Positions 17,854 to 23,369 of a stretch of 64,000 nucleotides of DNA are shown one piece after another (positions within the stretch are counted from its first letter, which is position 1; each line of letters begins with the position of its first letter). The notes beneath the pieces are model-generated. The model worked only from the letters and a program-made list of their open reading frames with translations. It was not told the DNA's origin and ran no database searches. This DNA is from Macrostomum lignano (Eukaryota), in assembly GCA_002269645.1 (NCBI GenBank), contig NIVC01000386.1, positions 62,001-126,000 on the forward strand, read 5' to 3'. The position numbers and the translations under genes are program-made.

Positions 17854-20461
17854 ATGAACGCTGCCGGTGCCACTGCAGCGACCGCTCACAGACGTCAGCC
17901 AACTGAACAAGAGTTTCTGGTGGCGATTGCCTCTGGCGACATACAGCTCATTCTTCATGCGGTCCGGAAGGGATTCACAACTATTGATCAACTGACCGGC
18001 TTCACGGATGAGCGCGTTCGTCTGTCACCGCTGCATCTCGCCTGCCTGACTGGGCAGGTAGCAATGGTGGACATCCTGATCAAGGCGCAGGCGGATATCA
18101 ATGTGGCAATGGACTTGGGCGAGACTCCTCTGTACTTGGCTGCGCAGAGTGGCAGCGGCAAAATTGTGAGACTGCTCGTCAAGGCTCAAGCGGATGTCAA
18201 TATTCAAGATGAGGACGGCGACTCCCCACTGCACGCCGCTTCGCAGGAGGGTCACCTGAAAGTCGTCGACTTTCTCATCCAGGCCAGTGCCAACGTCAAT
18301 CTAAGTAACAAAAGGGGTATGACCCCTGTCTACATGGCATCTCAGCGAGGCAACTTTCAGGTTGTGGACTCGCTTATCAAAGCGCAAGCGGATGTCAATC
18401 ACCAACTAGAACAGGGGGCAACGCCGCTGCACGTTGCATCACAGAATGGACAGCACTTGGTGGTGCAGTCACTCATCGAGGCCGGTGCGGAAGTGAATCT
18501 TCAGACAAAGCTTGGCGCAACTCCGATTTATGTTGCGTCATGTCACGGCTGCGTCAAAGTTGTCGACTTGCTGATCAAAGCTCGAGCTGATGTAAATCTG
18601 CCGATATACTCAGGACTTACACCGATTTACATTGCATCTGAGCAAGGTCATCATCTAGTGGTTCGGTCACTCATTAAAGCCCGTGCCAAGTTAAGCATTC
18701 TGACAGAGACGGGCGAGTCGGCACTTCACGCTGCGTCGGTGAATGGTCACTGCAAAGTTGCCGACCTGCTTATCGAAGCTCGGGCAGATGTCAATCTTCA
18801 AGAAATGACTCACTGCTCGCCTTTGTACATCGCATCACAATTCGGGCACACAAAGGTGGTGGAGTCTCTCATAAAGGGCGATGCTAACGTAAACCTTCAG
18901 CGACCCACGGAGAGTCGGCCCTGCACGCTGCTGCTCAAGGCGGCCACCACATGATCGTCGTTTCGCTAATACGTGCGGGCGCCAATGTCAACATTCAGCA
19001 AGCCACAGGAGAATCGCCGCTCTACATCGCAGCACAAAACGGGCACAGTCTGGTCGTGGATGCGCTAATCAAAGCGCGAGCCAGCGTAGATCTACCAAGG
19101 CGAAATGGTGAAACGCCTCTTGCCATTGCGTCCCAGTGTGGTCACCTTAAAATAGTGCGATCGCTCATCAAGGAGCGCGCAAATGTCGACCAACAGGACT
19201 CCTCGAGCGGCGCGACGGCCTTGTACCTGGCAGCTCAAAACGGTCACTGGGAAATTGTGGAGTCGCTTTTGAAGGTTCAGGCAGACACTTTTTTGGCCAA
19301 TACCGATGGGGTTTCTCCCCTGCTGGCTGCCTCGAGACATGGCCACCATCACATCATTCGCTTGCTCATCGAAGCACAAACCGATGTTGATCAGCCAGAT
19401 AGCAAAGGCTGCACGCCACTGTATATCGCCTCGCAAAATGGCCATCACCTGGCAGTGAAATTTCTGCTAAGCGCTAGAGCCAGTGTCGATACCCAAGTCA
19501 AGTCTGGCGCAACACCTCTGTACATTGCTTCACAGAACGGTCACGAAAAAGTGGTGACCTCGCTCCTTGATGCGCAGGCCAATGTCAATCTCTGTACAGA
19601 AATGGGCAGCACGGCAGTGTACATAGCCGCTCAGAATGGTCACCTGGGCATCGTCAGCTGCCTGATCAAAGCTGGTGCAAATTTGAACGCCAAGAACACA
19701 ACCAATGTTTCTCCTCTGCACACCGCATCGCGGCATGGCCACTACATAATCGTCAAGGCACTCCTCGCAGCCGGAGCTGAATTGGATAGCACCGATGCGC
19801 AAGGCTGTTCGCCTGTGTATATGGCGTCAAAGAACGGTCACCTGGAGGCTGTCAAGGCTCTCGTCAGGGGCCAAGCGAATACTGATCTGTGCAGAGCCAG
19901 CGGTGAGTCGCCTCTGTACATAGCAGCAGGGTACGGTCACATTACAGTGGTTGAAGCGCTCATCAAAGCCCAAGCCAATGTCAATCTGCAACAGAATATT
20001 GGTGCAACACCTCTGCTCATGGCGTCCCAAAACGGACATGACAAGGTCGTTCAGCTCCTCGTTGAGACTCAAGCCGATGTTGACGTTCCAATTAGAAATG
20101 GCATTTCGCCGCTCTACGCAGCTTCGCAACAAGGCCAAAATCAGGTGGTGAGACTCCTACTCAAGGCTAAAGCCTTGGTTGATCATCAACGGCTAACCGG
20201 AGAGTCCTCACTGTACGTCGCGTCCAAAAATGGCCACCACGAGGTGGTGAACTCGCTGCTCAAGGCCGGGGCAGACGCCAGTCTTCTCACTATCACGGGT
20301 TCGTCGGCGATACAAATTGCGTCGGAAAACGGGCACTGGAAAATTCTAGAGCTGCTTGAGGCCCATCTTATTGAGCAGTTTCCCCGCGGAAAAGGCAGCA
20401 GCAACATTGATCGGAGCGGCAGAGCTCCATTGAATTCTTTAGCAATTGCGACCAATCTTCG
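17854..20461 (+). CDS. Exon 1 of ankyrin-repeat/cGLR gene: about 24 ankyrin repeats (1-nt frameshift at ~18909)
   Basis: Repeated G-x-[TS]-[PA]-L-[HY]-x-A-[SA]-x-x-G-H...V-x-x-L-I-x-A-x-A-x-V-[ND] 33-aa units across ORFs 17824-18954 and 18951-20465; first in-frame ATG at 17854; donor CG|GTGAGA at 20461/20462. Confidence 0.93.
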
Positions 20462-20537
20462 GTGAGATTTGAAGAGGCCACTAAGTTCATGGGTTCAGCT
20501 TCAGCAATACTTAAGAAAGTAATGTATATCATTTCAG

Positions 20538-20881
20538 ATGCCCTTCAAGCGACAGCGAACTGAGTGAGCAGCTTCACTCCATGCTCACCAGGGCCGGTTT
20601 TGTGCAATCCAGAGCCGCCCTGCAGAGTGCAGTTGCTGATGCTTTGCAAGACATTCTGCAGCGCAGGATACACGGTGGAGTCTACGTTGTTGGCAGCTAC
20701 TCCGAGGGCTGGGGCAACAGTTTGACCAGTCTGAATGGCAAAACCGATGTCGAGTCTGACATTGACGTGATGCAGCTAATCGCGGGCAGATTGTACCATC
20801 TGAAGAACTCGTGTCACTGCGATTCCATGGAGGCGGAACAGCTGGATTACACTAATGGACACATTTTTTGCTCCGGATTCG
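20538..20881 (+). CDS. Exon 2 of ankyrin/cGLR gene: Mab-21/cGAS-like NTase N-terminal core
   Basis: Acceptor TTTCAG| in phase 2 matches exon 1; reads CPSSDSELSEQLHSMLTRAGF...VVGSYSEG...ESDIDVM (GS plus D-x-D motif); donor G|GTAAGA. Confidence 0.9.
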
Positions 20882-20988
20882 GTAAGATTTTTTGTTTATT
20901 TTTCCTGTTTGTCTCTTCATACTTTCTTAGGACTGCATTCCCAGCCTTTCATCTGAAAGCCAAATATTCCCCTTAAAAAAATTTACAG

Positions 20989-22391
20989 CATCCAGTCCGG
21001 CAGCATCAACAGTGGGGTCGTCCTTGAGGCCCGCGACTGACCGTGTCTCCGCCTGTCGCGTCTGCTCTTACCCAGCCATCGGTCCAACTTGTCCTGCCAG
21101 GGTCGCCAAGTCCAACCTGACCAAGTCCGTGCTGCGCTCACTCCGCAACGATGTGGCCTCGACGCCCTGTCACGTGGTGCACGCGGCTCCTCCGAATCAA
21201 GCAGGCCAGCAACTCCGGGTGAGCACCACATTTCTGGAGAAGCGTCTCCTGCGGAGCCTCAATACAGTGCAGGGCCAGCTGTTTGTTACACTGAAGTACT
21301 TGATAAAGAAGGTTATCGGCCGCAAAGTGAAGGGTCTGAAGGCCTATCATGCTAAGACCATCACGTTCCGAATGCTGGAGGAGACTAAACCAGACCGTTG
21401 GCATGAGCGAAATCTTGTGAGCCTCACCAGAGACTCGCTGCAGATGCTACTAGATAATGTGAATAGTAGCTGTACTGATGGCAGTACGGACGGTAGGATT
21501 ATGGAGCATTTCTTCCTGCAAGACGCAGCCTTGTATCTCAAAGGTGCTGACGGATGCACTGCTCAGGATGTTGCACATGTATTGAGAGCGTCATTGCGGA
21601 TTTGCCTGAGCTGCTAAGGCAATTCGTGGGCACTCTGGGAACTGTGGGTGGCATGGACAGATTCCAGTTTCATCCGTTCCAGATTTTGCCATTTATTTTC
21701 CACAAAAAAATTGAGCAATATTGTGAGTACCTCGATTATCACGAAATTTTCGACGTGGTTTATGACAGTCTGCTGCAGTTGAGCTCCCATGACGGCAGCT
21801 GCGATACGCGAGGGACGCTCCTTGCCCAGATCAGCCGCCTGCCCGACTGCGCTCGCTCAGCACGAGAGGCGCTTAAAGCGCTGACTTTCTTGAAGTTCGG
21901 AGATCGAGACGAAGCAATGATTGTGCTGCACGACTGCAGAGACCACAGGGTGAACAGAGGCATCGCATGGTCCACGGAGAGGCTGGTGACTGATGCGACA
22001 GTAAAGTTTGTTTGGCAGCATCTCAGGGACTGCGACTCCGCCTGGAGGTTCTGCTTCAACTTTTCCGATCGCCCTCCGACTCTAACATTTCTGCCGGCCT
22101 TTCTGGCAGAAAGCTTTCCCATGCAGACAGAGTATTACGTAACAAACTATTTCGCCAAATTCGATGCACTGCTGCACGCTCTGCGAATTGAACTGCTGCC
22201 GTGGGACGCGAACGCTCAACTCTGGATCCGGTCGGTAGCTGAGAGAGCGGACGCGGACGTGCAGGAGCTCGTGCTCGGCGCCGGGTACTGCAATGACGAG
22301 GCTATGGCTTCGAGGCTTGTGAAGAAAGTTCACGAGCAGCGGCGAGCGTTTCACCCTCGTCTGGTCGAGGAGTTTCACCGGAAAGTTTCAG
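20989..22391 (+). CDS. Exon 3 of ankyrin/cGLR gene: Mab-21 core C-terminal half plus helical extension (1-nt frameshift at ~21580)
   Basis: Phase-1 acceptor TTTACAG|; DRVSACRVCSYP (third Asp), CHVVH, LRVSTTFLEKRLLRSL, LKYLIK, LKAYHAKT, RW..RNL, MEHFF match the Mab-21 consensus; donor G|GTAAGC at 22391/22392; probable tiny last exon from 22487 (stop 22498-22500) or from 22494. Confidence 0.88.
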
Positions 22392-23369
22392 GTAAGCAAA
22401 AATGCGGCTTTTTTCAATCGGTGGGAAAAGGAGACGTGAGTTTTCAAAATCCCAAACTCGACTGTAAGTGCTTCGCCTCGTTTTAGGCCGCAGTCTATGA
22501 AGTGACGAAGACATGCAACTGGAGCCATGGAAGTCGGGACTACAAATTTTGTTTTGTGAAAGGCTAACGATGCATGCTCTGCTGCGAGTGACATAAAAAA
22601 TGAAATATGGAATTGAGTGGCATATCGTAAATATATTTTTTTACTTTTTTGTTTACGCTCGTAACAGCCGTTTATCAGTGAGAGCTTCAGGCACCGGTTT
22701 GCACCCCTTGACAGGACACTGAGAACTACGAGACAAGAGAAGTTTAGTTCCATGTCTTGGAAGGGAGGAAGCGGTAGAGAGTGGGAGAGAAGGTGAGAGA
22801 GGAAGATAGAAGGGCAGTGAGAGTAAGGGAGGGAGAGACCAGGTGAGAGGCTGAGGCTGGTACTCATACAAGTGAGTCACATTACTTACTTCGTTACCTC
22901 AATGCGCAAGTGATGCGGCTGGTGAATGGTGAATTGTGAATGGCTAGTCTACCTACCCTACCCTATAGTTTCTGTTGCTGACACTGGGAATTCAACCTTC
23001 AGATCTCCAAGCCAGAGAATTACTCCAGCTGTTCAACTCAACTCAAACCAAATAGCGCTCATATGTAAAACACCTTTAGAATCAAGTCTGTTTAATGCGA
23101 TGCCACTCTTCATATTTATATTTTATATGAAAAGTTCGTGTTTTAAAAACGAGAAAAAGGCTAGAAACATGCAAATTCTATTTTATCTACTGTACCTACT
23201 ATATTTACTACGAGCATGTAGTGACAAACTAAATATACTGCAGAAACATGTCACGTAGATGGACATGAGCACATTGAATAAAAGTGGCCTTTTTGATATT
23301 GTTTGCCAAATTTTTTAGTGCATCGTCCTGCGTTCAAAAATCGTCTTTGGGTGCGTGCAAAAGGAGCGA

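What the first reader, a model, noticed from the sequence alone, without database searches (positions are those of the whole stretch)
17854..22500. Giant ankyrin-repeat / cGAS-like receptor (Mab-21 NTase) fusion: candidate protein-sensing innate-immune receptor
Seen: five separate ORF-track entries join into one gene of about 1,455 aa. A 76-bp phase-2 intron (20462-20537) links about 24 ankyrin repeats in frame to a Mab-21 domain, and a 107-bp phase-1 intron (20882-20988) continues it. The core keeps GSYSEG, S-D-I-D-V-M and a third Asp (DRVSA), plus the R-x-S..LEK and AYHAKT motifs. Established: the cGAS/cGLR family shares this signature, and characterised members such as Drosophila cGLR1 make cyclic dinucleotides after nucleic-acid binding. 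Inference: a repeat solenoid of about 800 aa could be a ligand-sensing or autoinhibitory module, giving an NLR-like sensor-enzyme architecture. Whether this architecture is already catalogued cannot be checked here.
Basis: partly seen in the sequence, partly recalled or inferred. Interest (0 to 1): 0.9.

Follow-up and report, generated by a model that had tools for sequence, protein, structure and literature searches.

The report
Flatworm ankyrin-cGAS-like receptor gene copy
This is one more copy of an already catalogued flatworm (Macrostomum lignano) gene family that joins 24 ankyrin repeats to a cGAS-like signalling enzyme, and as written here it is broken by two single-base frameshifts, so it is real but not new.

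Summary
At 17854-22486 (+) a three-exon gene encodes about 1,480 aa: 24 ankyrin repeats, a cGAS/Mab-21-fold nucleotidyltransferase with GS, D-I-D and a third Asp, and a family-specific C-terminal domain of about 265 aa. Both introns (20462-20537, phase 2; 20882-20988, phase 1) are real GT..AG introns. They sit at the same positions and phases as in an annotated 1,459-aa paralog.

Two of the four ORF joins are not introns. They are 1-nt frameshifts (about 18898-18909 and 21585-21590), so the window does not encode an intact protein. Assembly error is somewhat more likely than a young pseudogene, but this is unresolved.

The organism is Macrostomum lignano. It carries a large expansion of this family: 89 representative clusters at E<=1e-30, and all 20 whose names were looked up are M. 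lignano. Several intact ANK-cGLR paralogs of 1,300-1,460 aa exist.

The architecture is already catalogued. Li et al. 2023 name ANK-cGLR fusions as a class, list M. lignano examples, and cloned five M. lignano members in their enzyme screen. No flatworm is among the groups they name for their 15 selected actives.

"Protein-sensing" is untested inference. Verdict: new member of a known kind, modest interest.

The parts
17854..20461 (+). Exon 1: first in-frame ATG, short N-terminal segment, 24 ankyrin repeats, linker. Ends in a split Arg codon (CG|A).
   Evidence: No in-frame ATG lies upstream of 17854 after the preceding stop. The N-terminus aligns with paralogs P0009, P0018 and P0006.
18010..20385 (+). 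24 ankyrin repeats in a 33-aa register (conceptual residues 53-844).
   Evidence: Pfam Ank E 1.1e-67 and Ank_2 E 5.6e-58 on the first 348 aa. Register and per-position entropy.
18898..18909 (+). Frameshift 1. The reading frame passes from frame 1 to frame 0 inside repeat 9/10, which behaves as a 1-nt deletion.
   Evidence: Three-frame translation. The 33-aa repeat register is kept only if one base is added here.
20462..20537 (+). Intron 1: 76 bp, GT..AG, phase 2. If retained, a TGA follows at once (20463-20465).
   Evidence: Same position and phase as intron 1 of paralog P0036 in locus L001.
20538..20881 (+). Exon 2: spine helices and the first half of the NTase core. Contains G52-S53 (20692-20697) and D74-I-D76 (20758-20766).
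   Evidence: AF2 places VYVV in a strand before the GS loop, and D76 at the start of strand 76-88 with D74 just before it.
20882..20988 (+). Intron 2: 107 bp, GT..AG, phase 1.
   Evidence: Same position and phase as intron 2 of P0036.
20989..22486 (+). Exon 3: rest of the NTase core, Mab-21_C helix bundle, C-terminal extension, stop TAG at 22484-22486.
   Evidence: collinear with 14 paralogs.
21039..21041 (+). Third acidic residue, D132 (RPATDRVSA), in strand 128-139 of the model.
   Evidence: The column is Asp in 13 of the 14 members that cover it and is M in P0035. A low-confidence hhalign places it on the VDLVPA motif of coral cGLRs.
21216..21359 (+). RVSTTFLEK (21216-21242) to AYHAKT (21342-21359): the stretch that matches cGAS/cGLR by sequence.
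   Evidence: Profile A1 against PDB hits only cGAS and one cGLR chain, E about 1.5e-4. Pfam Mab-21_C. hhalign against human cGAS.
21585..21590 (+). Frameshift 2. The frame passes from 0 to 2 between AHVL and SVIADLPELL, which behaves as a 1-nt deletion.
   Evidence: Paralog alignment: P0020 NVLREVIDELPELL.
21592..22486 (+). Family-specific C-terminal domain (about 265-300 aa, mixed helices and short strands).
   Evidence: Conserved in 12 paralogs (A2). AF2 alone gives pLDDT 82 and pTM 0.85. No significant PDB match by sequence or by fold (best is the TRIF N-terminal domain, E 0.029, TM 0.32).
22392..22398 (+). Possible alternative splice donor AG|GTAAGC near the 3' end. Its use is unknown.
   Evidence: Read. 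Paralog C-termini are variable.

Best explanation
This is one three-exon gene of Macrostomum lignano. It belongs to that species' expanded family of ankyrin-repeat / cGAS-like receptor (ANK-cGLR) proteins.

The conceptual product is about 1,480 aa and has three parts:
- a 24-repeat ankyrin solenoid;
- a cGAS/Mab-21-fold nucleotidyltransferase that keeps the GS loop and three acidic residues (D74, D76, D132);
- a family-specific C-terminal domain of about 265 aa.

Shown: the gene structure, the domain order, the fold, the motif pattern and the family membership.

Inferred: the enzyme makes a cyclic di- or oligonucleotide second messenger once activated. The ankyrin solenoid, and possibly the C-terminal domain, would be the ligand-binding or autoinhibitory module that gates it, rather than the basic nucleic-acid-binding surface used by cGAS.

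As written in the window, the gene is interrupted by two 1-nt deletions. I judge these somewhat more likely to be assembly errors than real mutations.
For: Organism and family:
- All close hits are M. lignano.
- The family profile finds 89 representative clusters at E<=1e-30. All 20 whose names were looked up are M. lignano.

One gene:
- Both introns are GT..AG.
- They have the same position and phase as in paralog P0036 (PAA80292.1, 1,459 aa, about 24 ANK + cGLR), which is annotated as one protein in GCA_002269645.1.
- Intron 1 is only 76 bp.

Fold:
- AF2 gives pLDDT 85.9 and pTM 0.88.
- The 35 Foldseek hits at E<=1e-3 are all cGAS, MAB21L1, MB21D2 or Sp-cGLR1. The best has E 1.9e-6 and TM 0.56 over about 390 columns.
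- The family profile hits only cGAS and one cGLR chain in the PDB.
- All 15 members match Pfam Mab-21_C.

Active site:
- The pattern is GS, 20 aa, D-I-D-V, 54 aa, then T-D-R (third Asp D132). This fits the spacing of the cGLR motif quoted in PMC9980059.

Frameshifts as artefacts:
- There are no in-frame stops elsewhere in about 1,480 codons, and all motifs and splice sites are intact.
- At about 28100 in the neighbouring gene, a protein model from another source (P0029) needs GG where the window has G.
Against: - No transcript or read evidence exists for this copy. No identical protein was found for the ankyrin or NTase parts among 5.8 billion sequences; only the last 128-aa stretch matches, in a chimeric model.
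- PF03281 does not match, and Mab-21_C is below the cut-off for this copy.
- The residues flanking the catalytic motif deviate: VVGS instead of h[QT]GS, and T-D-R instead of h-D-h.
- The five M. lignano relatives cloned by Li et al. are 32-37% identical to this copy. No flatworm is among the groups the paper names for its 15 selected actives.
- A planarian lacks both cGAS and STING (PMC13563047). Whether M. lignano has a STING was not tested.
- The three-dimensional clustering of the three acidic residues could not be checked, because model coordinates are not exposed.
Confidence: 0.6

Rival explanations
1. Young unprocessed pseudogene. The two 1-nt deletions are real, and this copy of a large, fast-turning-over receptor family has just been inactivated.
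For: - Two independent frameshifts lie in one gene.
- No intact or identical protein exists for this locus in either public M. lignano protein set, apart from a C-terminal fragment in a chimeric model.
- Large lineage-specific families usually carry pseudogenes.
- Paralog loci in GCA_002269645.1 read through 863-aa exons without frameshifts.
Against: - No premature stop occurs in any of the correct frames over about 1,480 codons.
- Splice sites, all conserved motif residues and the 33-aa repeat register are intact.
- A third 1-nt deficit relative to an independent source lies in the neighbouring gene. That points to a property of this assembly or haplotype rather than of this gene.
Confidence: 0.35
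2. Non-enzymatic Mab-21-fold scaffold. Like MiD49/MiD51 or MAB21L1, the NTase-fold domain binds a nucleotide or a partner but makes no second messenger. The ankyrin repeats simply recruit partners.
For: - MAB21L1 and MiD51 are also among the Foldseek hits.
- There is no PF03281 match.
- No flatworm is among the groups named for the selected actives in the dsDNA/poly I:C screen, although five M. lignano members were cloned.
- cGAS and STING are missing in a planarian.
Against: - GS, DxD and the third Asp are kept in this copy and in almost all paralogs.
- cGAS chains outrank MAB21L1 and MiD51 in both sequence-profile and fold searches.
- Li et al. state that many cGLRs are inactive in vitro, probably for want of the right ligand.
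Confidence: 0.2
3. Two separate genes or mRNAs: an ankyrin-only protein and a Mab-21 protein that merely lie next to each other.
For: - Retaining intron 1 gives an immediate stop.
- Some database entries are NTase-only, but these are partial models that start at the exon-2 boundary.
Against: - The gap is a 76-bp GT..AG intron with a split Arg codon.
- The identical junction exists in P0036, where the annotation joins both parts.
- At least 20 listed or named M. lignano proteins carry both parts.
Confidence: 0.03

Closest known systems
M. lignano giant ANK-cGLR paralogs: PAA80292.1 (BOX15_Mlig034192g1, 1,459 aa), PAA65090.1 (1,313 aa), PAA79794.1 (1,309 aa)
   Same: Same domain order, similar size and number of ankyrin repeats, same three-exon structure with identical intron positions and phases, and the same C-terminal domain.
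   Different: Only about 45% identical in the ankyrin part and 50-57% in the NTase part. Introns here are 76 and 107 bp, against about 410 and 3,330 bp. This copy has two frameshifts and lacks the hydrophobic N-terminal segment.
M. lignano cGLRs in Li et al. 2023 (PMC9980059): Table S3 nos. 89-93 (PAA86972.1, PAA45980.1, PAA57558.1, PAA93208.1, PAA68676.1). Three of these, plus PAA58690.1 and PAA68216.1, are listed with Ank_2 domains in Table S2.
   Same: Same family: four of the five were compared, giving E 1e-56 to 1e-75 over about 400 aa, with the same GS..DxDV, LRVSTxxLE, YHxKT and FHPF motifs. The source paper files them under the ANK-cGLR architecture class.
   Different: 32-37% identity, so a different subfamily. 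The closest paralogs of this gene were not found in the supplementary text that is held, which is partly truncated.
Human cGAS, S. pistillata Sp-cGLR1, Drosophila cGLR1
   Same: Same bilobed NTase fold, GS loop plus three acidic residues, and the RxSxSxxEK and YHxKT motifs.
   Different: - About 15% identity.
- There is a 20-residue GS-to-DxD loop.
- There is no cGAS-type zinc thumb, but a family-conserved Cys/His set lies elsewhere.
- The catalytic part has a near-neutral pI.
- The ankyrin and C-terminal domains are extra.
- The ligand and product are unknown.
[quoted passage not shown] 2023, Fig. 4C)
   Same: A cGLR core fused to a protein-interaction module in a genome with a radiated cGLR family.
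   Different: Different phylum. No sequence comparison was done here. The number of repeats and the C-terminal domain in the coral proteins are not known to me.
NLR / STAND receptors
   Same: By analogy only: a repeat solenoid joined to a signalling module, in an expanded, variable family.
   Different: No NACHT or NB-ARC NTPase domain was detected. The output would be a small-molecule signal, not oligomerisation-driven recruitment.

Membership tests
cGAS-like receptors (criteria of Li et al. 2023, quoted) | Active-site motif h[QT]GS - X8-20 - [DE]h[DE]h - X50-90 - h[DE]h | tested here: met
   The pattern is VVGS(52-53), 20 aa, D74-I-D76-V, 54 aa, T-D132-R. The catalytic residues and spacing fit. 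The flanking positions deviate (V for Q/T; T and R for hydrophobic residues). Paralogs read AVDLV, AMDLV and similar.
cGAS-like receptors (criteria of Li et al. 2023, quoted) | [quoted passage not shown] | tested here: inconclusive
   C-lobe: the profile hits only cGAS and one cGLR chain in the PDB (E about 1.5e-4), and Mab-21_C matches in 15 of 15 members (best E 1.4e-7). N-lobe: there is no PF03281 hit, and hhalign aligns it only at low confidence.
cGAS-like receptors (criteria of Li et al. 2023, quoted) | Predicted structural homology to known cGLR / CD-NTase enzymes | tested here: met
   AF2 gives pLDDT 85.9. Foldseek against PDB returns cGAS, MAB21L1, MB21D2 and Sp-cGLR1 with probability 1.00, E down to 1.9e-6 and TM 0.48-0.56 over 360-400 columns.
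cGAS-like receptors | Ligand-dependent synthesis of a cyclic nucleotide second messenger | not testable with these tools
   This needs biochemistry. Five M. lignano relatives were cloned in the published 140-enzyme screen, and no flatworm is among the groups the paper names for its 15 selected actives.
Pfam Mab-21 (PF03281 NTase domain, PF20266 Mab-21_C) | Score at or above the curated gathering cut-off | tested here: not met
   PF03281 gave no match at E<=0.1. PF20266 scored 20.5 bits against a cut-off of 24.1 for this copy. Some paralogs are labelled Mab-21-like by UniProt.
ANK-cGLR fusion class (Li et al. 2023, Fig. 1C / Table S2) | Ankyrin repeats and the cGLR core in one polypeptide | tested here: met
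   In-frame splice across a 76-bp intron. The identical junction occurs in annotated paralog P0036. Transcripts of this particular copy were not tested.
Ankyrin-repeat proteins | Tandem 33-residue repeats matching the Ank profile | tested here: met
   Pfam Ank E 1.1e-67 on the first 348 aa. There are 24 repeats with invariant A11, G15 and L23.
NLR / STAND receptors | Central NACHT or NB-ARC NTPase domain | tested here: not met
   No such Pfam family was found in any part of the protein.

The most novel reading that the evidence does not exclude
The M. lignano ANK-cGLRs might form a large, variable receptor repertoire. In it, the ankyrin solenoid would recognise a non-nucleic-acid ligand, such as a pathogen or self protein. 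The so far unmatched C-terminal domain, which has faint TRIF-N-terminal-domain resemblance, would act as a new regulatory or output module. Signalling would proceed without a canonical STING, in a phylum thought to have largely lost the pathway.
Probability: 0.15. Interest if true: 0.7.

Novelty: new member of a known kind. Interest (0 to 1): 0.3.

Why it matters
The ligand and the role of the appended repeat domains in ANK-cGLR fusions are unknown. The only paper found that mentions them (PMC9980059) catalogues them without testing full-length proteins.

Most flatworms are reported to lack immune cGLRs, and a planarian lacks both cGAS and STING. A free-living flatworm with many dozens of ANK-cGLR genes is therefore a tractable place to ask two questions: what non-nucleic-acid inputs cGLRs can sense, and what reads their product.

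This single copy adds little to that question. It is an unannotated, possibly broken paralog.

Tried and rejected
- Single-sequence phmmer against PDB gave no cGAS hit. Only the family profile did.
- hhalign against four coral cGLRs from the paper's Table S3 failed in global mode. In local mode it gave a low-confidence alignment (E 0.038) that still pairs the GS loops and the third Asp.
- Exact look-ups gave nothing on record for P0029, the neighbouring GPCR ORF, or the window ORFs 18951-20465 and 21554-22486. No independent DNA copy was therefore available to settle the frameshifts.
- Accessions of the closest paralogs were not found in the held supplementary text of Li et al..
- The C-terminal domain has no PDB match by sequence or by fold.
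- I ran no further search on STING. A vertebrate query would probably miss a flatworm STING with that word-indexed tool, so a negative result would say nothing.
- I considered a mini-intron at each frameshift and rejected it, because there is no GT..AG pair there.
- I considered an upstream start at ATG 17817 and left it open. It is out of frame by one base with the ORF.

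
Full report
**What is in the sequence**

Between 17854 and 22486 on the + strand, five long ORFs lie in different frames.
- 20462-20537 is 76 bp, GTGAGA..TTTCAG, and splits an Arg codon CG|A (phase 2).
- 20882-20988 is 107 bp, GTAAGA..TTACAG, and splits an Ala codon G|CA (phase 1).

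The other two junctions are not introns. Each behaves as a single missing base.
- Between 18898 and 18909 the frame slips from 1 to 0 inside an ankyrin repeat (..GDANVNLQ | ..GESALHAAAQ).
- Between 21585 and 21590 it slips from 0 to 2 (..AQDVAHVL | ..SVIADLPELL).

No GT..AG pair is available at either place. With both slips bridged, the conceptual product is 1,484 aa to the TAG at 22484-22486. An AG|GTAAGC at 22392/22393 could be an alternative donor that would shorten it to about 1,452 aa plus whatever follows.

**Domains**

The first 348 aa match Pfam Ank at E 1e-67. Laid out in a 33-residue register, the protein has 24 repeats (residues 53-844), with A11, G15 and L23 invariant. The most variable positions are 1-3, 5 and 17, followed by 21, 18 and 14. 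That pattern is usual for ankyrin proteins and proves nothing about a ligand.

After a linker of about 25 aa comes a region of 582-614 aa. Its only Pfam match is Mab-21_C (PF20266), at E 5.5e-4 and 20.5 bits, below the 24.1-bit cut-off. PF03281 does not match.

**Organism and family**

A search with the C-terminal part returned 35 proteins. All named ones are from Macrostomum lignano except three short metagenomic contigs, and many combine ankyrin repeats with the same C-terminal region. One UniProt model (P0029) is 100% identical over 128 aa. The rest of that model maps to exons at 26.6-33.1 kb in the window, so it is a chimeric gene model.

A profile of the window protein plus 14 paralogs (A1) was run against 1.84 billion representative proteins. 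It found 988 hits at E<=1e-3 and 89 at E<=1e-30. All 20 top hits whose names I looked up are M. lignano. The next tier, at E 1e-13 to 1e-20, includes a tubeworm and a clam.

Searching with the ankyrin part found no identical protein. It did find intact giants of the same architecture: PAA80292.1 (1,459 aa), PAA65090.1 (1,313 aa) and PAA79794.1 (1,309 aa).

**One gene, not two**

I fetched the locus of PAA80292.1 (L001, GCA_002269645.1). Its protein maps to three exons. Its two introns split an Arg codon AG|A after the linker and an Ala codon G|CC after ..GHxxxPGY. These are the same positions and phases as in the window. Together with the 76-bp size of intron 1, this makes separate ankyrin and NTase genes very unlikely.

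**Fold and active site**

AlphaFold2 on the 582-aa region with alignment A1 gave mean pLDDT 85.9 and pTM 0.88. All 35 Foldseek matches at E<=1e-3 against the PDB are cGAS, MAB21L1, MB21D2 or the coral Sp-cGLR1. The best has E 1.9e-6 and TM 0.56 over about 390 columns. Bacterial CdnE and MiD49/51 follow. The family profile hits only cGAS and one cGLR chain in the PDB, at E about 1.5e-4.

The secondary-structure order fits cGAS: spine helices, strand, GS loop, a strand whose start carries D74-I-D76, then a later strand with D132. The spacing is GS, 20 aa, DIDV, 54 aa, then T-D-R with D132. This fits the motif that Li et al. use to define cGLRs (quoted), with deviations only at the flanking positions.

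Profile-profile alignment confirms the C-lobe motifs: RVSTTFLEK with RLSFSHIEK, and YHAKT with YHVKT. It pairs the GS loop and the third Asp with those of coral cGLRs only at low confidence. I could not inspect coordinates, so the clustering of the three acidic residues is inferred.

**The C-terminal domain**

Residues from about 316 to the end are conserved in 12 paralogs (A2). They fold confidently on their own (pLDDT 82). They have no PDB match by sequence or by fold. The best fold hit is the TRIF N-terminal domain, at E 0.029 and TM 0.32. One paralog also gave a weak Pfam TRIF-NTD hit, at E 0.068. I treat this as a faint hint only.

**Are the frameshifts real?**

Against decay:
- No stop codon occurs in the correct frames over about 1,480 codons.
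- Splice sites are intact.
- Every conserved motif residue is kept.
- In the neighbouring gene at about 28100, the independent model P0029 reads ..PEAP VGRQ.. This requires CCGGTC where the window has CCGTC. The window therefore lacks a base relative to another source at a third coding site within 10 kb.

For decay:
- No intact protein for this locus exists in either public protein set.
- Paralog loci in the NCBI assembly read through without slips.

Exact look-ups for other copies of the locus found nothing. I put assembly error at roughly 60-65%.

**What is known**

Li et al. 2023 (PMC9980059) catalogued more than 3,000 cGLRs.
- They state that some contain ankyrin-repeat modules (Fig. 1C, Table S2).
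- They list M. lignano proteins with Ank_2 domains in that table.
- They cloned five M. lignano members (Table S3, nos. 89-93) in their 140-enzyme screen. Four of these were compared here and are 32-37% identical to the window protein, at E 1e-56 to 1e-75.
- The 15 actives they describe come from insects, anemones, molluscs, hydras and corals.

A 2026 study found neither cGAS nor STING in a planarian (PMC13563047). No paper in the searchable library tests what the ankyrin module of a cGLR does.

**Verdict**

The family assignment is supported by fold and motif, though not by the Pfam NTase model. The architecture is already catalogued, in this very species.

The idea of protein sensing is a reasonable but untested inference. 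'NLR-like' is only an analogy, since no STAND NTPase is present. This is a new, unannotated and possibly broken member of a known kind.

Noticed in passing
window ~28095-28105: In the downstream gene, the UniProt model P0029 reads ..TVLPEAP|VGRQDG.. across a point where the window needs a frame change. The source of that model has GG where the window has G. This is a third single-base deficit in coding sequence within 10 kb.
   Followed up: partly
window 21896-22279 plus 26622-33149: UniProt A0A1I8FFB5 ('Pecanex_C domain-containing protein', P0029) fuses a 128-aa stretch near the 3' end of this cGLR gene to exons of a downstream gene. It looks like a chimeric gene model. No Pfam family was detected in it here.
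   Followed up: partly
window 20797-21173 (residues H87, C92, C94, H108, C140, C175, H176 of the NTase part): Seven Cys/His residues are conserved in 13-14 of 14 paralogs. They may form one or two metal sites, at a different place from the cGAS zinc thumb. Part of this stretch has low model confidence.
   Followed up: partly
window 21592-22486: The family-specific C-terminal domain has no solved-structure match. Its best fold hits and one weak Pfam hit in a paralog both point faintly to the TRIF N-terminal domain.
   Followed up: partly
window 17817-17856: Several paralogs begin with a hydrophobic segment (for example MRFLEWLLNFVGAFCMPVF). The window copy lacks it from its first in-frame ATG (17854). 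The in-frame upstream peptide ..KDNFFTTAF resembles its end, and an ATG at 17817 is one base out of frame. The true 5' end is uncertain.
   Followed up: partly
window 7272-8597 (+): An intact single-exon ORF of 441 aa matches rhodopsin-family 7TM receptors (PF00001, E 5e-25).
   Followed up: partly
window 39625-43553: An ORF at 40717-41682 has a weak GIY-YIG match (E 9e-4, below cut-off). It is flanked by two long (TCTA)n arrays. It may be a fragment of a Penelope-like retroelement.
   Followed up: no
whole window: About 40% of the 64 kb lies in 34 tandem-repeat arrays (TRF score 400 or more). Many of them produce long spurious ORFs in several frames.
   Followed up: partly
P0030 (1,065-bp contig), P0025 and P0031 (about 1.7-kb contigs): Short metagenomic contigs encode the same eukaryotic family at 44-46% identity. 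One is labelled as a Kangiellaceae bacterium MAG. This is probably eukaryotic DNA binned into a MAG, from an unsampled relative.
   Followed up: no
L001 1-279 and 3001-11129: In the NCBI assembly, the paralog PAA80292.1 lies directly downstream of another 1,117-aa ankyrin protein on the same strand. UniProt model P0162 merges two such NTase units. The family therefore occurs in tandem arrays elsewhere, whereas the window holds a single copy.
   Followed up: partly
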